IMG/VR virus record: IMGVR_UViG_3300024239_000015 | Coordinates: 62,001 to 126,000 of that record | Length of the DNA: 64,000 nucleotides | Direction: 5' to 3' (one strand) | Shown: positions 622-16,601 of the stretch, one piece after another | Layout of the letters: the number at the start of each line of letters is the position of its first letter | Numbering within the stretch: the stretch's first letter is position 1 | Notes under the pieces: model-generated | What the model saw: the letters and a program-made list of their open reading frames with translations, nothing else | Told to the model about the DNA's origin: nothing | Database searches by the model: none | Made by a program: the position numbers and the translations under genes

Positions 622-1002
622 TTAATCCATTAACTTGATTACTAACACAGCCGCTCTGTGGGGGTTTGTCCAATGCCCGTCTTCGAACACTTCTAAGAAG
701 CACAATAGAAAACGACGACCATCTTTATACCGCACTTCTATTCTATCTTCTACTGGTATTTGAGTCGGGTAGTGGATGTTCAGCAGCACACGGCTAGAAG
801 AACTAACACAAAGAAGTCCTAAATAAGGTTCTTCGCCGTACGTACGTGTGATTTCAACTGAAGGAAACGCGATGGAGTCGCTGGTCAGTGAGGGTATCTG
901 ATCCAGTAACCAACTCGATACCTGGGACGGAATCCCGTGTTTTGTAACCACCGAAACTTCAAAGTTATCCGTCGAGAATACCTGATTTACAAAGTCTGTC
1001 AT
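622..1002 (-). CDS. Hypothetical protein
   Basis: 126-aa ORF, GGAG RBS, ATGA overlap with upstream ORF. Confidence 0.65.
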   Translation of the reverse strand: MTDFVNQVFSTDNFEVSVVTKHGIPSQVSSWLLDQIPSLTSDSIAFPSVEITRTYGEEPYLGLLCVSSSSRVLLNIHYPTQIPVEDRIEVRYKDGRRFLLCFLEVFEDGHWTNPHRAAVLVIKLMD

Positions 1003-1190
1003 GTTTTGTCTCCCAATGGAAGTGAGTTCCCTCTATTAGCTAACTTCCTGTACGTCTCTACCGCTAACGTCAGGTGTTTGTTTAACGCGTCGAACTTACG
1101 GTTTTTCCAGAGTTCATGTGCTTCAGAACCCGGAGCGATACACAGTTCCCCGTGTTGAGGGTGTTGGTAAGTGATAGTTGCTTTATTCAT
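999..1190 (-). CDS. Small hypothetical protein
   Basis: 63-aa ORF, GGAG RBS, tightly packed between neighbours. Confidence 0.6.
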   Translation of the reverse strand: MNKATITYQHPQHGELCIAPGSEAHELWKNRKFDALNKHLTLAVETYRKLANRGNSLPLGDKT

Positions 1191-1192
1191 CG

Positions 1193-1933
1193 CTACTCCG
1201 CTGGGATTAAGTCGATTGTGATTAACTTAAAGCTACCGTCTGCTGTTTGGATTCCACGTAAACCCATTTTCACCTCCCCTTTCTGTATACCTTCATACGC
1301 CGTCTGGGTGATTGGTTGTACGTGAGCTACATACGTGTGTGGATGTACGCGAGTAAGTTCTACTGTAGCCCCAACACGCTCAGGTTTAACTTCAAACGCA
1401 CGACGCTCCCATTCCTCGTCTGACATCTCAGGCGTGCGGATAGGGCGTCCGTATTCGGCGTGAAACGTTTTCTCTAAAGGAAATTCGTATTTCTCCAACT
1501 CCCGTGTAACGACATCTATCGGAATCCCCTTTGCTACAGCAAATCCGTTCAGATCACCTAACATTATCGTCGTGTACCCTTTTGGTAAGTAAGGGTCTAT
1601 CGCGACCGGTGTATCAAACATTTTGCTGCATTCCCATAACGCACGAGTGGCTTCTTTTACACCGTGTGTGTTTGCTAGGAATAGCAAAGTTGCTTCAGCG
1701 CCACCAGCGCGGATCGTAGTATCGGGGATAACCACACAGTAACCAATACCGTGATAGCATGCTCTGAGTATCGCGATAGGGTCGTGTTCTACAACAACGT
1801 CGATATGAAACCATTTCTGTGGTTTATGCCCTTCAGCGGTGGTTAAACACGCCCCTTTACGTAAGTTCGTCTGGGCGTACGTCGTGTCCGGCGGCGATTG
1901 AAATTTCCCGTACCACTTTAGTAAATGAAACAA
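1193..1933 (-). CDS. Protein with C-terminal degenerate prohead-protease-like domain
   Basis: FHAEYGRPIRTPEMSDEEWERR...MGLRGI...ITIDLI aligns by eye with LTGECGHPKRAPGMTYDDYMVR...FSIRSF...LTWDWV of the protease at 15861..16601. Confidence 0.55.
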   Translation of the reverse strand: MFHLLKWYGKFQSPPDTTYAQTNLRKGACLTTAEGHKPQKWFHIDVVVEHDPIAILRACYHGIGYCVVIPDTTIRAGGAEATLLFLANTHGVKEATRALWECSKMFDTPVAIDPYLPKGYTTIMLGDLNGFAVAKGIPIDVVTRELEKYEFPLEKTFHAEYGRPIRTPEMSDEEWERRAFEVKPERVGATVELTRVHPHTYVAHVQPITQTAYEGIQKGEVKMGLRGIQTADGSFKLITIDLIPAE

Positions 1934-2406
1934 ACCCGCAGTGGTTTCGAATGGAACGTGAAATTTCTGCTTTCCCTTGAACGCATCGATGACAAGGTAG
2001 CAGTTAAACCATCGCGTTTACAAACTTCCCGCATCCGTCGCATCAGGTCACGTAAGTTACAGTCACACCCACCCATCACGTAGATAGTTCTACGCGCATA
2101 ACACGTGCGACACATCCGTGAGACTTCATACGCTAACTGATTCAGCTCCATATCAGTATACCGCCACAATTTTAACCGTGTGGTGTTTCTCCCAAGCTCC
2201 CCTCCTTTACGCGCCACACACATCGCAGGCATATACGTGAGAGCGTTCTGTAAACGCTGTTCCTGTACACGTCTCCATGGATTTGGAAACAGTAAACGAT
2301 GCGAGCAGCGTAGAAAATTAACCAGCAGAAAAACTGCACTTCCGAGTTCTTTACACACGCCCCACCATAGTTTTGCTTCCGTTTGTAACGTAGATGATAG
2401 CGTCAT
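1918..2406 (-). CDS. Hypothetical protein (Cys-rich, basic)
   Basis: 162-aa ORF with AGGAG RBS; CxxC and CxC motifs. Confidence 0.55.
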   Translation of the reverse strand: MTLSSTLQTEAKLWWGVCKELGSAVFLLVNFLRCSHRLLFPNPWRRVQEQRLQNALTYMPAMCVARKGGELGRNTTRLKLWRYTDMELNQLAYEVSRMCRTCYARRTIYVMGGCDCNLRDLMRRMREVCKRDGLTATLSSMRSRESRNFTFHSKPLRVCFIY

Positions 2407-2494: not shown

Positions 2495-3067
2495 CTAACA
2501 TTTTTGTTGCTCCATTAAAAAGACCTCGAAGAATTCTAAGTCTTGTTTTTGTAAACGACATCGAACTTCAATATCTGCGGGATCTATAGGGTTTGGTCGT
2601 CGGGACTCATCAAACCCAAACATTTGTTTGTGGGAGGTGTGCGTCTTCCCAGTGAGGTATGTGAAGCTGTCGTAGTATTTTTCGCCAACACTAAAATAAA
2701 CGTGTGCTCCGTTGTCCCACCACTCCACTGGGAGCCCGCGGCGCCTGAGTACTTCCCCCACACTTAGCGCAAAGAGACCACAGTCACCACAATTCAAATA
2801 CCCATGCAAAGCAGCTTCAGTGAGGCTTACTTGCGCCCAGTTTAACCACGCTGGTGGTTTGAAATGCTCGTCGGCAACATCTTCGATGACCGCGCGATAC
2901 ATCACCCCATACCAAGCTAGAAAGCTTTCTGCGACTCTACGAAAGTAAAGCGCTTCATTTTGCAAGGTTGTTAGACGATCGATTAAACTGCCAAGTTCCC
3001 CGTTGTTTAAGTGAGTAAAACTTTCTGTACAAATACAGAACTTAAGACAAGATGATGTACACGCCAT
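2495..3067 (-). CDS. Putative transglutaminase/papain-like fold protein
   Basis: NCGDCGLFA...AHVYF...YYD Cys-His-Asp pattern; start moved to ATG 3067 (AAGGA RBS) because 3088 lies in a terminator. Confidence 0.45.
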   Translation of the reverse strand: MACTSSCLKFCICTESFTHLNNGELGSLIDRLTTLQNEALYFRRVAESFLAWYGVMYRAVIEDVADEHFKPPAWLNWAQVSLTEAALHGYLNCGDCGLFALSVGEVLRRRGLPVEWWDNGAHVYFSVGEKYYDSFTYLTGKTHTSHKQMFGFDESRRPNPIDPADIEVRCRLQKQDLEFFEVFLMEQQKC

Positions 3068-3086
3068 GTGATATTCCTTCGATGTC

Positions 3087-3117
3087 AAAAAAGAGGGAGT
3101 TTCGACTCCCTCTTTTT
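3087..3117. terminator. Bidirectional intrinsic terminator
   Basis: AAAAAAGAGGGAGT-TTCG-ACTCCCTCTTTTT. Confidence 0.85.
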
Positions 3118-3172
3118 ATTATTTTTAATTGGGGGTAAACTCTCCCCTCTCAGTGCTAACGGTTTGTTTCGA

Positions 3173-3525: not shown

Positions 3526-4992
3526 TTACTCCGGTGAGAAACCCACACGAACCTTTTTCATTCTTCCTTCGAAGATTTCTGCTAAAGTACCAGCAGTCGC
3601 ACAGGACTCTGGTAACTCGTAATGGTTCACAACGCGTGTTGCCTCATGTGAGGTCAGCTCGCGGGTTTCTACCGCTTTGTAACAACGACCAGGACGTATC
3701 AGTGCTTGGTCTATTTTGTTACGCGTGGATAAGTTTGTGGTGATCACCAATTTGATCTTTTTAGAAGCGATACCCTGTAACTCGTTTAACAACATCGACA
3801 TCAGCTCATTACCGTCCTGCCCTTCTCTAGGCGCAAGTAACGTATCTACGTCTTCGAAGATCACCAACGTGTTATCTGGAATCGACATAAAGTACGCGGG
3901 AAACATTGCGTTACGTAAATGGTGCGTACCACCGATTTGTAACAGACGGTAACCTTTGCTGTCACCCGCGCGACAGATCTGTGCTAATAACGAACTCTTC
4001 CCAGTCCCGTAAGGACCTAACAGTAAGGTCATGTTTGCGTTAGACTGGAAGAAGCCCTCTATGTAAGCATCCACTCCACCGTCTAAGTAAGGGTAGTTGA
4101 CGTCGTGTGGTATGTTCTTTCCAGGAACAATCTCACGCGTGGTTACAGTACCCTTACCGTTACAGTCGATGTTCGTTAACAACGACAGCTTCACGGGCTG
4201 TTCAACTTCCCACTTCTTAAACCACTCGAGCTCTTGTAAGATCTTCGGCTGGTCCTTGCGTTCGAAGTAAGCCGCATACACAAACTTCGTCCCGTTAACG
4301 TTCACACGGATCGCAGACGTTAAGATTTCGTTGTCGCCATGAATGCGTTTGCGGTATGCGTTAAAACCAGGCAAGTCTTTATCGAACGAGTACTCGATCA
4401 CGTACTCTAAACTTTCGAGGTATTGTGCTATTTCCTCTACCGTCTCTAGGGTAAATTCTTGGCAGGCAAAACGTCTTTCCAAAAACCCCGTAGAAATACC
4501 ATTCGCCAAATGGTGTTCTACGATTCGAAGTACTCCAGTGATAGCACGTAGTGACATGATATCGGAGAACGTAGTGATTTGTAAGCGAGTGTGTGTCATT
4601 TCTGAAAAATCTCCGTTGAGATACGCTGTGAAAAAGAACCAAGGGTTGGTGAAACCCACATCGGCCATGTGTGATGTAGCCGCCGGTCTACTTTTGTCAA
4701 CTGTTTTAAGGTGCAGTGCAGTCGAGATACCAACGACAGGCGTTCCGGGTATAACTAAGAACGCTTTGCAGGTTAGGTCGATCCCTCCCAGTCTATTAAA
4801 ATCGAAATGATCAAAGTTGACGGGGACGGAGGGTAGACTTGAGACAGACCGCCTCAACGGAAGATTTTCTTTCGCGATCGGTTCTAATAAATCGGTCCAC
4901 TCGGCGTCGTAGCTTGCGAATTCCCAATTCGGCATCATGGGTCTTTCGATAGTTCTTCGTAGGGATTTCCACCCTGAAGGGTCCATATGCAT
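3526..4992 (-). CDS. AAA+ ATPase (classical clade), paralogue 1
   Basis: Walker A GPYGTGKS, Walker B VIFEDVD, sensor-1 TTN, SRH DQALIRPGR. Confidence 0.85.
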   Translation of the reverse strand: MHMDPSGWKSLRRTIERPMMPNWEFASYDAEWTDLLEPIAKENLPLRRSVSSLPSVPVNFDHFDFNRLGGIDLTCKAFLVIPGTPVVGISTALHLKTVDKSRPAATSHMADVGFTNPWFFFTAYLNGDFSEMTHTRLQITTFSDIMSLRAITGVLRIVEHHLANGISTGFLERRFACQEFTLETVEEIAQYLESLEYVIEYSFDKDLPGFNAYRKRIHGDNEILTSAIRVNVNGTKFVYAAYFERKDQPKILQELEWFKKWEVEQPVKLSLLTNIDCNGKGTVTTREIVPGKNIPHDVNYPYLDGGVDAYIEGFFQSNANMTLLLGPYGTGKSSLLAQICRAGDSKGYRLLQIGGTHHLRNAMFPAYFMSIPDNTLVIFEDVDTLLAPREGQDGNELMSMLLNELQGIASKKIKLVITTNLSTRNKIDQALIRPGRCYKAVETRELTSHEATRVVNHYELPESCATAGTLAEIFEGRMKKVRVGFSPE

Positions 4993-5037: not shown

Positions 5038-6414
5038 CTACACACGAAAGCCAGGGCCCGCGGTCAGCTCTGCAGCGTTTGGACCATCTAAAACATCCGC
5101 TAAACTTACGTTATCCCGAATGCGGTCTTCCGGTAAGTTTAACTCCGCAACAATCACCGCAGCTTGATCGCGCGTTAGGTGTTTGAATTGTTTCAATGCG
5201 TAACAACGACCCGGACGGAACAATGCCGGCTCTATCATTTTCGTGTTTTCTAAGTTCGTGGTGATTACAAACTTAACGTCGCGTACAGTCACTCCAGACA
5301 ACTCATTCAGTAACGTTGAGATGCTGGTGTTCCCTTCTTCACGTTTACCGATTAAGGTGTCAGCTTCTTCGATTAAGACTAGTGAGTTTTCTGGTATCTT
5401 CGTCAGATATGCATCAAACGCTGGGTGCGTCAACACTTTCTCACCGCAGAATTGGTAGATTTTCCGTTCGCCCGCACTACGACATAAGTGCCGCAACAAC
5501 GTAGACTTGCCTGTACCTGGAGGGCCGATCAGCAACAACAAGTTGTTTTTGTCGTCTAAGAACGATTCGGTAACGCCATCCAAACCGCCTTCCAGATATG
5601 GATAGAACATATCTTTCGGCGGATTGAAGTTTTCGTCCACGACACGAATTGTGATATCCGCTTCACCGTTTGGTGTAAACCCTACTACGTAATTTATCGT
5701 TGTTGGAGGAGTCGATTTGTATTGTTCCAAAAATGCGATGATCTTCGACTCTTTTACGTCGTGTCCGTCTGCAACGTAGCTCGCGTATCTGAGTTTTTCA
5801 GAACTCACCGAAATGTGAATTGCGGCAACCATGAACTTGTGACCTAGGTCGAGTTCTGTGATATAGAATGCATTGATTGCAAAGGAGTCGGCACCGGAAT
5901 CACGGCTTTCTACCAAGTAACCTAACTCTTTTAAGAACACCACCGTGGATTTAAGTGCTCCGCGGTTGTATCCTTTTTGTAGGTAATCAAAGTCGGTAAA
6001 CGCTGTGGATACGTTATTCGCGAAGTGATGTTCGTTGATACGTAACACACCCGTCATGGCACGTAAAGCGATAAGTTCTTCGGCGGTACGTACGAAGGCT
6101 AAGTTTTGAATAGTTTGCATGAGCTCTCCTAAGAGGTTTAAGTAATGAAATTTAAGTATATCCTCGTAGTCCGAGTTGGTGGGATCTACGAGAGTCGGTC
6201 GTGTTAAAATGATTTGGATGTCGTTACTGTGGCTGAACCTACACGCGGTATAGAGTGTTTCTACGTCGTATCGAGAGTATAACTCGATGTCTTCGCAAAA
6301 CACCGTTCCTGTGACCGCTTGGAGTAACCACCGCCACTGTTTGAAATCTCCCAGAGGGATGGTACGGTCGTAAACGATCTCCGGTATCAGCGGGTCGGCG
6401 TCCTCAGCGATCAT
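5038..6414 (-). CDS. AAA+ ATPase (classical clade), paralogue 2
   Basis: Walker A GPPGTGKS, Walker B VLIEEAD, TTN, EPALFRPGR; likely start MIAEDAD at 6414 (ATGA overlap). Confidence 0.85.
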   Translation of the reverse strand: MIAEDADPLIPEIVYDRTIPLGDFKQWRWLLQAVTGTVFCEDIELYSRYDVETLYTACRFSHSNDIQIILTRPTLVDPTNSDYEDILKFHYLNLLGELMQTIQNLAFVRTAEELIALRAMTGVLRINEHHFANNVSTAFTDFDYLQKGYNRGALKSTVVFLKELGYLVESRDSGADSFAINAFYITELDLGHKFMVAAIHISVSSEKLRYASYVADGHDVKESKIIAFLEQYKSTPPTTINYVVGFTPNGEADITIRVVDENFNPPKDMFYPYLEGGLDGVTESFLDDKNNLLLLIGPPGTGKSTLLRHLCRSAGERKIYQFCGEKVLTHPAFDAYLTKIPENSLVLIEEADTLIGKREEGNTSISTLLNELSGVTVRDVKFVITTNLENTKMIEPALFRPGRCYALKQFKHLTRDQAAVIVAELNLPEDRIRDNVSLADVLDGPNAAELTAGPGFRV

Positions 6415-6842
6415 AAATCCCCCAGAATAATCGCTAGTTCCAAAGAGCGTTTGGTTGACTTCTGAGTGTTCGTAACGTATTCGAAGACCTGCTTGTCGTG
6501 GGGGGTGTTGAACGACTGTCTGTGGTTGTACCCCAAGTACAACGACGTACGATCTAGCACCGCAGGCGAGCAATACAACATCGTTGATCTGCGGTCTGGT
6601 ATGTACGCCAGAGGCTGTAGAAACGGAATCGTATCGGCAAACATTCCTGAGTAAGAGGGGTGCGCAACCGAAAACGGATGGTCTCCTACCTCACTATTCG
6701 CGTGTAGGTCTACAGAGAACATAGGAGCCACACAGAACAAGTCGGGTTGGACTGGGAGTTGTACTCCTTCTTTCAGTTGGGCAATCGTGCACACAGGACG
6801 TTCGTGCTCAAAGACCCACGCATGCACTGTTTTTATTTTCAT
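6411..6842 (-). CDS. Hypothetical protein, paralogue of 6839..7288
   Basis: Start MKIKTV at 6842 (GGAGGGAG RBS, ATGA overlap); VQPDLFCVAPMFSVD motif. Confidence 0.65.
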   Translation of the reverse strand: MKIKTVHAWVFEHERPVCTIAQLKEGVQLPVQPDLFCVAPMFSVDLHANSEVGDHPFSVAHPSYSGMFADTIPFLQPLAYIPDRRSTMLYCSPAVLDRTSLYLGYNHRQSFNTPHDKQVFEYVTNTQKSTKRSLELAIILGDL

Positions 6843-15860: not shown

Positions 15861-16601
15861 TTACCACGTATGGCTTCCAGAAACCTTCGCGACGTTTAGC
15901 GTAGCTTTTTGGTAACTCCCCACCGTTTCGTTCAGTAGACTCTGTGCTGACTCAAAGCCTAACCCTAAGGTGTGGACTTTCTTCTGAGCAGCCAGTAAGA
16001 CTTCCAATGGAACGTCTAAGTCCATACAGACCGATTCCAGTGCAGGAGATGCAAACTTATTCGCAGGACGTAACCCAGGTTCTGACACCCAATCCCACGT
16101 TAAGATCGTATCCAAGTACTTGATGCGCCGTACGTCATCGTCTCGTGTGAAACTACGAATACTAAACGCGACGTTCTGCTCTGGGTTAGACAACGCTTCC
16201 CGTAGCGCAGGACCCATTGGACCTGACGGTTTGACTTTCCCCATGATCAACACCGCACCGTTGTGCAAGTGTTTCTGTGAGTAGTCTAACCACACTTTAG
16301 AGATATGGTGAGAGATGTTCGTCTCTTCCAGGGTATGCACCCGCACCATGTAATCGTCGTACGTCATCCCAGGAGCACGTTTCGGATGGCCACACTCACC
16401 GGTGAGGTAGCCGTCTTGCACCCGACGCATAAACGCACTGGACTCCGCAAAGAGATGCAACGCCCCTTGCAATGCGTAGGTGTAGCCTACGGAGTTTGGG
16501 TACTCCAATGCACCGAGGATCACGGTGTAGTACCCTAAGTGGTCGGGCGTGAGCTGCCCTGCTTTATTCGTCCCATTTAAGGCCGTACATTGAAACTTCA
16601 T
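15861..16601 (-). CDS. Prohead (capsid maturation) serine protease, phiKZ gp175-like
   Basis: GECGHP (His), AFSIRS (Ser), TWDWVSEPG; synteny with the gp178/180/181 block. Confidence 0.88.
   Translation of the reverse strand: MKFQCTALNGTNKAGQLTPDHLGYYTVILGALEYPNSVGYTYALQGALHLFAESSAFMRRVQDGYLTGECGHPKRAPGMTYDDYMVRVHTLEETNISHHISKVWLDYSQKHLHNGAVLIMGKVKPSGPMGPALREALSNPEQNVAFSIRSFTRDDDVRRIKYLDTILTWDWVSEPGLRPANKFASPALESVCMDLDVPLEVLLAAQKKVHTLGLGFESAQSLLNETVGSYQKATLNVAKVSGSHTW

What the first reader, a model, noticed from the sequence alone, without database searches (positions are those of the whole stretch)
1193..1933. Apparently inactive prohead-protease paralogue in the accessory region
Seen: the C-terminal ~100 aa track the real protease at 15861..16601 motif by motif. 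GECGHPKRAPGMTYDDYMVR corresponds to AEYGRPIRTPEMSDEEWERR, GKVKP to AHVQP, FSIRSF to MGLRGI and LTWDWV to ITIDLI. The presumed catalytic His becomes Arg and the Ser becomes Gly. The domain is fused to an unrelated ~140-aa N-terminal region and lies ~14 kb from the head genes. Inference: a pseudoprotease, for example a substrate-binding decoy, a regulator of head maturation, or a decoy for host defences that sense phage proteases.
Basis: partly seen in the sequence, partly recalled or inferred. Interest (0 to 1): 0.62.

Follow-up and report, generated by a model that had tools for sequence, protein, structure and literature searches.

The report
Dead, truncated copy of head protease
This giant phage carries, far from its head genes, a second and very diverged copy of its capsid-maturation protease; the copy has lost the cutting residue and the capsid-targeting tail, and in this genome it has also lost its own start, so it is a further, partly decayed example of a protease look-alike already noted in giant phages whose job is still unknown.

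Summary
Evidence: hhalign against 36 S80 proteases (E 3.5e-6); hhalign against second S80-like genes of other jumbo phages (E 3.8e-9); a profile built only from those genes finds it (E 3e-8); the model matches T4 gp21 (Z 10.6). The nucleophile Ser is Gly and the His is Arg. The Asp and five non-catalytic invariant residues are kept. The ~70-aa C-terminal prohead-targeting tail is absent.

Two things change the picture. First, the kind is known: Ali et al. 2017 described such paralogues (SPN3US gp117, Stratton gp135, 201phi2-1 gp206), function unknown. I found them in about 10 of 37 jumbo-phage records, nearly all lacking His and/or Ser. Second, the window's copy is a 5'-truncated allele. A co-occurring sister strain has a 324-aa gene with a Shine-Dalgarno site, an ATG and the His. 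The window lacks 612 bp, which removes 55 codons and the start. Contigs from four runs confirm this allele, and it is the dominant one.

It is a non-catalytic pseudoprotease. A role in binding is inference only. This copy may be a dispensable remnant.

The parts
1193..1933 (-). ORF as flagged: 246 codons from a TTG with no Shine-Dalgarno site. It is the 5'-truncated allele of a 324-aa gene (intact form = P0003, L003:2217-3191).
1196..1648 (-). S80/gp21-fold pseudoprotease domain (residues ~96-246). It ends 5 residues after the conserved Asp, so it has no C-terminal tail.
   Evidence: hhalign; profile; alignment; model and fold search
1445..1447 (-). Arg163 at the catalytic His position (His in the sister allele and in all 36 proteases).
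1262..1264 (-). Gly224 at the catalytic Ser position (Gly in both alleles). The second Ser of the FSIRS motif is also Gly (1253-1255).
1211..1213 (-). Asp241, the third triad residue, retained.
1649..2017 (-). Remnant of the N-terminal region of unknown fold. The frame stays open up to the stop at 2018-2020, but the only start codon is the TTG at 1933.
   Evidence: no family found
1996..1997 (.). Junction of a 612-bp deletion relative to the sister strain (L003:1770-2381). It removes the 3' 149 codons of the upstream gene and the SD site, ATG and first 55 codons of the paralogue.
   Evidence: contigs and loose ends
1918..2406 (-). Upstream ORF made by the deletion: 136 codons of the neighbour gene (268 aa in L003), then 26 out-of-frame codons read from the paralogue's 5' part. 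It keeps its own AAGGAG site and ATG.
1619..1621 (-). First in-frame ATG (Met105), window-specific (Leu CTA in the sister allele). If used it would give a 142-aa domain-only product. It has only a weak GGGAA 9 nt upstream.
15861..16601 (-). Genuine S80 prohead protease (His72, Ser147, Asp170; C-terminal tail 176-246), the reference for the comparison.

Best explanation
The ORF encodes a very diverged, non-catalytic paralogue of the phage's S80 (phiKZ gp175-type) prohead protease. It belongs to the loose class of 'second protease-like genes' of phiKZ-related giant phages, first noted as SPN3US gp117.

Shown: the domain has the gp21/assemblin-type protease fold. It keeps the non-catalytic invariant residues of the family (Glu, Gly and Pro of the E-x-G-H-P motif, two Arg, one Pro) and the triad Asp. 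It has Gly in place of the Ser nucleophile. It lacks the ~70-aa C-terminal tail that Ali et al. infer targets the real enzyme into the prohead and is then removed by self-cleavage.

Inferred: it cannot cleave and is not delivered into proheads by the protease's own route. Because the pocket-lining invariants are kept in every paralogue while His and Ser are lost again and again, the intact protein most likely acts as a binding module. It would hold either Glu-containing cleavage motifs or propeptides of head proteins, or the protease itself, and it is tethered to a 171-aa N-terminal domain of unknown function.

Shown for this genome: a 612-bp deletion removed the gene's SD site, ATG and first 55 codons, and the catalytic His has become Arg. 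This allele is the dominant genotype in the source samples.

Inferred: the full-length protein is dispensable, and the window's copy is probably poorly translated or untranslated. That would make it a recently disabled remnant rather than a working regulator.
For: Homology. Fold: AF2 model pLDDT 77. T4 gp21 5JBL is the top PDB hit (Foldseek prob 0.99; VIA Z 10.6, rmsd 3.4 A, 137/153 residues, next unrelated hit Z 5.1; herpesvirus proteases Z 3.8-4.6). The best BFVD hits are 124-159-aa uncharacterised proteins of jumbo phages (Phabio x3, 201phi2-1 x2, RAY, Miami, Eowyn) and prohead proteases. Catalytic state: (12 paralogue sequences: His kept in 2, Ser in 3, both in 1; Asp, Glu, Pro, Pro and Arg149 kept in all 12; the motif Gly and Arg87 in 11 of 12). 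Class already described: PMC5694885 section 17. Prevalence: a second or third S80-like match in 10 of 37 IMG/VR jumbo-phage records, 8 of them above the Pfam cut-off, after excluding one match that is the protease split at a record end; also in cultured Erwinia and Salmonella phages. Real gene: dN/dS against the sister allele is 0.14 (N-terminal part 0.09, S80-like domain 0.20), like the neighbouring genes at 0.06-0.14. Truncation. The intact allele has a canonical SD site (TTAGGAG) and ATG, whereas the window's TTG has none; 13 of 18 window starts checked have a GGAG-type site. The deletion allele has 0 differences in contigs of four runs. In run X4 it has depth ~1990 against ~137 for the variant carrying the 612 bp. 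It is not a recent duplicate of its own protease.
Against: No expression, protein or binding data exist for this phage or for any gp117-like protein, so the binding role is inference. The frame is still open for 274 codons and the past dN/dS is low, so a truncated product could still be made and used, by re-initiation at the TTG 13 nt before the upstream ORF's stop or from the new ATG at 1619-1621. The structure model used an alignment that contains S80 proteases, so the fold match is not fully independent. Only one independent relative (92% nucleotide identity, same sample) exists, so selection after the deletion cannot be measured. The predicted complex with the protease gave no verdict.
Confidence: 0.6

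Rival explanations
1. The truncated window allele is still functional. A 246-aa product (TTG at 1933, translationally coupled to the upstream fused ORF) or a 142-aa domain-only product (new ATG at 1619-1621) works as a pseudoprotease. The second would be about the size of the standalone 124-160-aa paralogues of other jumbo phages.
For: The frame is intact over 274 codons. dN/dS is 0.14-0.20. The Leu-to-Met change that creates the ATG at the start of the domain is window-specific. The upstream ORF stops 13 nt after the TTG. The deletion allele is dominant in four samples. Standalone paralogues of 124-159 aa are common.
Against: There is no GGAG-type site before the TTG and only GGGAA at -9 before the ATG, whereas 13 of 18 window starts checked and the intact allele have a clear one. 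dN/dS sums both lineages and cannot see a recent loss. There are no RNA runs.
Confidence: 0.33
2. Chance resemblance: the ORF is not related to the protease.
For: Pairwise BLASTP gives E 0.08. Pfam has no hit for the window ORF. An exhaustive phmmer search with the sister allele finds no S80 protease.
Against: Four independent profile tests are significant. Every family-invariant non-catalytic residue aligns. The fold match to T4 gp21 has Z 10.6.
Confidence: 0.02
3. It is still an active protease that uses non-canonical residues (for example another Ser or Thr near the pocket), giving the phage a second, non-prohead protease.
For: The Asp and the pocket invariants are kept. The sister allele keeps His. 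One paralogue in another phage (G015) keeps His, Ser and Asp.
Against: Both Ser of the FSIRS motif are Gly in both alleles, and His is Arg in the window. Nothing tested here shows a substitute nucleophile in register.
Confidence: 0.03
4. It is a decoy or shield against a host defence that senses or targets the prohead protease or its cleavage motifs.
For: It lies in a hypervariable accessory island with strain-level gene replacement and indels. The class evolves fast, is patchily distributed and varies in copy number.
Against: No defence system is known to me that senses S80 proteases. Nothing in the neighbourhood points to counter-defence. The dominant strain has disabled or truncated the gene.
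Confidence: 0.07

Closest known systems
SPN3US gp117 and its relatives (Stratton gp135, Kwan gp144, 201phi2-1 gp206, PhiPA3 gp143): diverged paralogues of the giant-phage prohead protease (Ali et al. 2017, PMC5694885)
   Same: A second S80-like gene far from the head module. It is detectable only by profiles, lacks the protease's C-terminal region, lacks an aligned catalytic His, keeps the Asp, and has no known function. The window domain matches a profile of such paralogues better than the protease profile and groups with them in a tree, though long branches make this weak.
   Different: Those proteins are 136-165-aa standalone domains, whereas the intact allele here is 324 aa with a 171-aa N-terminal region of unknown fold. 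There is no detectable close sequence relative apart from one sister strain. The Ser is also lost, whereas the paper aligns a Ser in gp117. The window copy is 5'-truncated.
MEROPS S80 / Pfam PF20034 prohead proteases (phiKZ gp175, SPN3US gp245; here window:15861-16601)
   Same: Same domain fold and same invariant Glu, Gly, Pro, Arg, Pro, Arg and Asp.
   Different: No Ser nucleophile, no His (window allele), no C-terminal tail, a ~13-aa shorter hairpin, below the Pfam cut-off, and not in the head gene cluster.
T4 gp21 (MEROPS S77; PDB 5JBL) and herpesvirus assemblins
   Same: Best structural match of the model: Z 10.6 over 137 residues. Assemblins score Z 3.8-4.6.
   Different: 13-16% identity. 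gp21 is an active His/Ser/Asp enzyme packaged in the prohead core.
Pseudoenzymes derived from proteases in general
   Same: A catalytic residue is lost while the fold and pocket are retained under purifying selection.
   Different: In established cases a binding or regulatory role has been shown. Here none has.

Membership tests
Peptidase S80 (PF20034, phiKZ gp175 type) | Sequence match above the Pfam gathering score (23.4 bits) | tested here: not met
   Window ORF: no hit; 9.7 bits in six-frame search. Sister allele: 21.4 bits, E 1.6e-4.
Peptidase S80 (PF20034, phiKZ gp175 type) | Remote homology of the whole catalytic domain | tested here: met
   hhalign E 3.5e-6 against 36 proteases. Through the paralogue profile: E 3.8e-9 and 4e-36. 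Profile search E 3e-8.
Peptidase S80 (PF20034, phiKZ gp175 type) | Catalytic His (His72 here; H77 in SPN3US gp245) | tested here: not met
   Arg163 in the window; His in sister allele P0003.
Peptidase S80 (PF20034, phiKZ gp175 type) | Catalytic Ser (Ser147; S153 in gp245) | tested here: not met
   Gly in both alleles.
Peptidase S80 (PF20034, phiKZ gp175 type) | Catalytic Asp (Asp170; D178 in gp245) | tested here: met
   Asp241.
Peptidase S80 (PF20034, phiKZ gp175 type) | C-terminal tail that targets the enzyme to the prohead and is removed by self-cleavage | tested here: not met
   The ORF ends 5 residues after the Asp strand, whereas the protease has 71 more residues. The role of the tail is as inferred in PMC5694885.
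Peptidase S80 (PF20034, phiKZ gp175 type) | gp21/assemblin fold | tested here: met
   5JBL Z 10.6, 137/153 residues aligned. Caveat: the model's alignment includes S80 proteases.
Peptidase S80 (PF20034, phiKZ gp175 type) | Proteolytic activity on S/A/G-X-E sites | not testable with these tools
   Needs biochemistry.
gp117-like diverged S80 paralogues of giant phages | A second S80-like gene in a genome that also has a bona fide S80 protease | tested here: met
   Exactly two S80-like places in the 233-kb genome.
gp117-like diverged S80 paralogues of giant phages | Profile similarity to other such paralogues | tested here: met
   hhalign prob 96%, E 3.8e-9, 135 columns. Best BFVD fold hits are such proteins.
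gp117-like diverged S80 paralogues of giant phages | Lacks the protease's C-terminal region | tested here: met
   PMC5694885.
gp117-like diverged S80 paralogues of giant phages | Short standalone protein (~125-165 aa) | tested here: not met
   The intact allele is 324 aa and the window ORF is 246 aa. The metagenomic examples also range from 153 to 567 aa, so size is a loose criterion.
gp117-like diverged S80 paralogues of giant phages | Common descent from one ancient duplication | tested here: inconclusive
   The tree groups it with most paralogues (85/94), but on branches of 2-5 substitutions per site. Two paralogues fall among the proteases.

The most novel reading that the evidence does not exclude
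The catalytically dead S80 paralogues of jumbo phages, this one included, form a functional family of cleavage-motif or propeptide binders that act outside the prohead. They might chaperone or sequester ejection-protein precursors, or hold the protease, until assembly. Different N- or C-terminal add-ons (171 aa here) would direct them to different partners. The coexisting full-length and truncated alleles in one subsurface population would then be a natural experiment in tuning that control.
Probability: 0.15. Interest if true: 0.7.

Novelty: new member of a known kind. Interest (0 to 1): 0.38.

Why it matters
Giant phiKZ-like phages build heads with dozens of proteins that one S80 protease trims. 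Since 2017 it has been known that some of them carry a second protease-like gene, but nobody knows what it does. This case adds three useful facts. The class is common in uncultured jumbo phages (about a quarter of 37 genomes, sometimes in tandem). It has lost His and/or Ser repeatedly while keeping the other invariant pocket residues, which argues for a non-catalytic use of the same pocket. And at least one natural population is dominated by a strain in which the gene is truncated, so it is not essential. A practical point also follows: RefSeq labels several such paralogues 'head maturation protease', which is misleading.

Tried and rejected
- Megablast of window:1-6000 and tblastn of the ORF against 50,697 phage records: no match.
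- Word-index protein search: one relative only, P0003.
- Exhaustive phmmer search of 1.84 billion representatives with P0003: only itself, so no alignment of close homologues could be built.
- IMG/VR scan with P0003 returned L004, which is 100% identical to the window and so not independent. The scan with the protease likewise returned only the same genome.
- The 70%-identical protease relative (P0005, L006) could not be searched genome-wide because the record is not held. Its 10-kb flank does not reach the syntenic position.
- Single-sequence AF2 of the 324-aa protein: pLDDT 42, unusable.
- Idea that the paralogue is linked to an upstream AAA+ ATPase, as in Salmonella phage SPAsTU where an HslU-like ATPase lies two genes upstream: rejected. 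The two ATPases share only the P-loop and belong to different families.
- Idea that the N-terminal region is a second degenerate S80 domain: rejected (hhalign prob 0.7%).
- N-terminal region against Pfam, PHROGs and the ESM Atlas: nothing usable.
- Profile of the paralogues against PDB sequences: no hit.
- Predicted complex of protease plus paralogue domain: first call busy, then 'no answer' (score 0.01). This is not evidence either way.
- Thomas & Black 2013 on gp175 is not held, so the catalytic residues are cited from PMC5694885.
- Assembly artefact as the cause of the 612-bp gap: rejected by contigs from four runs and by coexisting alleles in one run.

Full report
**What is at the coordinates.** The window is bases 62001-126000 of a 233,377-bp virus record with direct terminal repeats, that is, a jumbo phage. 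On the minus strand, 1193-1933 is a 246-codon ORF that begins with TTG. The ORF at 15861-16601 is, by coincidence, also 246 codons. It is an unambiguous S80 prohead protease (PF20034 E 7.2e-71; phrog_3014 'head maturation protease' E 1e-74). It sits next to virion genes (phrog_2926 and others). An alignment of 36 homologues shows invariant Glu69, Gly71, His72, Pro73, Arg87, Pro125, Phe146, Ser147, Arg149, Ser150 and Asp170. Ali et al. 2017 (PMC5694885) align the catalytic triad of the homologous SPN3US gp245 as H77/S153/D178. This corresponds to His72/Ser147/Asp170 here.

**Check of the observation.** In a 28-row alignment, the paralogue's A-E-Y-G-R-P segment, its H-V-Q-P, its M-G-L-R-G and its I-T-I-D-L-I fall in the same columns as the protease's G-E-C-G-H-P, K-V-K-P, F-S-I-R-S and L-T-W-D-W-V. 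His is replaced by Arg163 (codon 1445-1447). Ser is replaced by Gly224 (1262-1264). Asp is kept (1211-1213).

Pairwise BLASTP is only E 0.08 and Pfam does not call the window ORF, so significance had to come from profiles:
- PF20034 finds the ORF in a six-frame search of its own genome (E 0.045).
- PF20034 hits the intact sister allele at 21.4 bits, E 1.6e-4, just under the 23.4-bit cut-off.
- phrog_3014 hits the sister allele at E 5e-4.
- hhalign against the 36 proteases gives prob 87.6%, E 3.5e-6, with the match starting at protease residue ~8.
- hhalign against eight second S80-like genes of other jumbo phages gives prob 96%, E 3.8e-9 over 135 columns, right to the C-terminus. That set in turn matches the proteases at E 4e-36.
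- A profile made only from those eight sequences picks the window ORF out of the 233-kb genome at E 3e-8.

So the homologous domain is ~150 aa (residues ~96-246), not ~100. It covers the whole catalytic domain of the protease, with a ~13-aa shorter hairpin. The protease's last ~71 residues have no counterpart.

**Structure.** A single-sequence model was useless (pLDDT 42). With the 28-row alignment the domain folds at pLDDT 77, pTM 0.73. In the PDB the three top Foldseek hits are the chains of T4 gp21 (5JBL; prob 0.98-0.99, TM 0.50-0.55). VIA-align gives Z 10.6, rmsd 3.4 A, 137 of 153 residues. The next unrelated hit is at Z 5.1, and herpesvirus proteases score Z 3.8-4.6. Because the alignment contains S80 proteases, this is corroboration, not independent proof.

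**The gene in this genome is a truncated allele.**
- The only relative found anywhere is P0003, 324 aa and 90% identical (word search; exhaustive search). It lies on a 4.3-kb contig from the same JGI sample (L003).
- Against L003, the window lacks L003:1770-2381, which is 612 bp. That segment holds the last 149 codons of the upstream 268-aa gene, plus the Shine-Dalgarno site, the ATG and the first 55 codons of the paralogue.
- In the window the upstream gene therefore runs out of frame into the paralogue and stops at 1918 (the fused 162-codon ORF 1918-2406). The paralogue's frame is open only back to a stop at 2018-2020, and its first start codon is the TTG at 1933.
- Of 18 window starts checked, 13 have a GGAG-type site a few nucleotides (about 4-10) before the start codon, most of them an ATG. 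The intact allele has TTAGGAG followed by ATG. The window's TTG has nothing comparable. The first in-frame ATG (1619-1621, a window-specific Leu-to-Met change at the start of the domain) has only GGGAA at -9.
- The sister allele also keeps the catalytic His (E-Y-G-H-P), so His-to-Arg happened on the window's lineage. Gly at the Ser position is shared.

The deletion is not an assembly artefact. Logan contigs of four runs from four samples of one subsurface-metagenome study carry window:1-5000 without a single difference. These runs may include the source of the window, so they are not fully independent. In run X4 a major form (depth ~1990) coexists with a minor form (~137). The loose ends of the minor form at 1996/1997 read into the 612-bp segment of L003. 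L004, from IMG/VR, is the same genome and was not counted.

**Is it a real gene?** Between the two alleles dN/dS is 0.14 overall (0.09 for the N-terminal part, 0.20 for the S80-like domain). Neighbouring genes give 0.06-0.14. So both parts have been under purifying selection over most of the ~8% divergence. This cannot show whether constraint continued after the deletion, because there is no outgroup.

**What the kind is.** I searched PF20034 in 37 long IMG/VR records that carry an S80 protease. Ten of them had a second or third S80-like match far from the main protease. Eight of these were above the Pfam cut-off, one record had two in tandem, and two were weak. An eleventh extra match is just the protease split across a record end, so I did not count it. 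tblastn finds the same in cultured phages:
- Salmonella phages SPAsTU and STsAS: 148 aa.
- Erwinia phages Asesino, phiEaH2, Huxley, Caitlin, ChrisDB and Machina.
- Erwinia phage Stratton: gp135 and gp136 in tandem.

RefSeq labels several of these 'head maturation protease'. The best BFVD fold matches of my model are 124-159-aa uncharacterised proteins of Phabio (three), 201phi2-1 (two), RAY, Psa21, Miami and Eowyn.

This class is in the literature. Ali et al. [quoted passage not shown] They list counterparts in Stratton (gp135), Kwan (gp144), 201phi2-1 (gp206) and PhiPA3 (gp143). They call a protease paralogue 'unprecedented', and they note the missing aligned His and the missing 3' region. 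They infer that in gp245 this region targets the enzyme to the prohead and is removed by autoproteolysis. I found no later paper that assigns a function.

**Pattern across the class.** I aligned 12 paralogue sequences to one model:
- His is kept in 2 (the sister allele and one IMG/VR gene).
- Ser is kept in 3.
- Both are kept in only 1.
- Asp170, Glu69, Pro73, Pro125 and Arg149 are kept in all 12. Gly71 and Arg87 are each kept in 11.
- All stop shortly after the Asp strand or continue into unrelated sequence, and none has the protease tail.
- Some carry N-terminal additions (124 or ~360 aa) or C-terminal additions (~100 aa), so the 171-aa N-terminal region here is not unique in principle. It has no detectable relative or fold.

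In a tree, the window's own protease pairs with its orthologue from another phage (100/100). The paralogue sits on a very long branch among the other paralogues (85/94). So it is not a recent duplicate, but long-branch effects forbid more than that.

**How it most likely works.** Shown: the protein has a protease fold without a nucleophile and without the targeting tail, and it is conserved as a protein. Inferred: it cannot cut and does not ride into the prohead as the protease does. The repeated loss of His and Ser, with strict retention of the other pocket residues (including two Arg in an enzyme family that cuts after Glu), is the signature of a pseudoenzyme that still uses the pocket to bind. 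The likely ligands are cleavage motifs or propeptides of head and ejection proteins, or the protease itself. I give that role about 0.35-0.4 for the intact allele.

For the window's allele, the SD site, the ATG, 55 codons and the His have all been lost in the strain that dominates four samples. This makes 'dispensable, weakly translated or untranslated remnant' somewhat more likely than 'working truncated product'. I put it at roughly 0.5 against 0.33. A predicted protease-paralogue complex returned no verdict and is not used.

**Context.** The ORF lies 14.7 kb from the protease among non-structural genes:
- two tandem AAA ATPases (3526-4992 and 5038-6573);
- an HNH/Srd-like protein;
- a QueC-like protein;
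- thymidylate synthase;
- a MazG-like protein.

The stretch between the ATPase and the paralogue is a strain-variable island. One gene is replaced (only 67% identity over part of it), and the minor strain differs by several indels. A tempting parallel was that SPAsTU has an HslU-like ATPase two genes upstream of its paralogue. It failed, because the ATPases are unrelated beyond the P-loop.

**Verdict.** The specific roles remain untested. The kind is already known (gp117-like paralogues), so this is a new and unusually diverged member with an added N-terminal region. In this genome it is a truncated allele. Interest is moderate. The value lies in the class-wide pattern and in the natural full-length/truncated polymorphism, not in this copy itself.

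Noticed in passing
window:3526-4992(-) and 5038-6573(-): Two tandem, paralogous AAA-family ATPases (both phrog_14322; PF00004 in the C-terminal third) with long N-terminal regions of unknown function, directly upstream of the variable island.
   Followed up: partly
window:2296-3146 versus L003:836-1470: Strain-variable island. The gene here (2495-3088, 197 aa, phrog_6870) is only ~67% identical over part of its length to the sister strain's 176-aa gene, while the flanks are 91-97% identical. The minor strain in run X4 shows further indels at 2420-2646 and 2675-3157.
   Followed up: partly
window:1918-2406(-): The upstream gene of unknown function (268 aa in the sister strain) is cut to 136 native codons plus 26 out-of-frame codons by the same deletion. 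Its first ~30 codons also differ between the strains (dN/dS 0.5).
   Followed up: partly
L101 (G026:C1:88800-91700); L110:2926-3892 (Stratton gp135/gp136): Some jumbo phages carry two S80-like paralogues in tandem. Phabio and 201phi2-1 have two or three small gp21-fold proteins according to BFVD. The class has expanded repeatedly.
   Followed up: partly
RefSeq records NC_031107.2, NC_019929.1, NC_031127.1, NC_031120.1 and others: The 135-165-aa dead paralogues are annotated 'head maturation protease' in RefSeq, although the real protease lies elsewhere in those genomes. This is a likely annotation error that will propagate.
   Followed up: no
window:7301-8452(-): A 383-aa protein whose C-terminal part matches HNH endonuclease, endonuclease VII and 'decoy of host sigma70 / Srd anti-sigma' PHROGs.
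   Followed up: no
window:999-1190(-) versus L003:3194-3361: The small gene just downstream of the paralogue is 63 aa here and 55 aa in the sister strain (different C-terminal end). For the next gene (113-703), the sister strain's ATG aligns with an internal Met, at residue 29 of the listed GTG ORF, which suggests the real start is that ATG.
   Followed up: no
L100 (G015:C1:7300-9700), ORF 974-1759(-): This is the one second-copy S80-like gene that keeps His, Ser and Asp (262 aa, with a 124-aa N-terminal addition and no tail). It is a candidate for a genuinely active second protease in a 324-kb phage.
   Followed up: no
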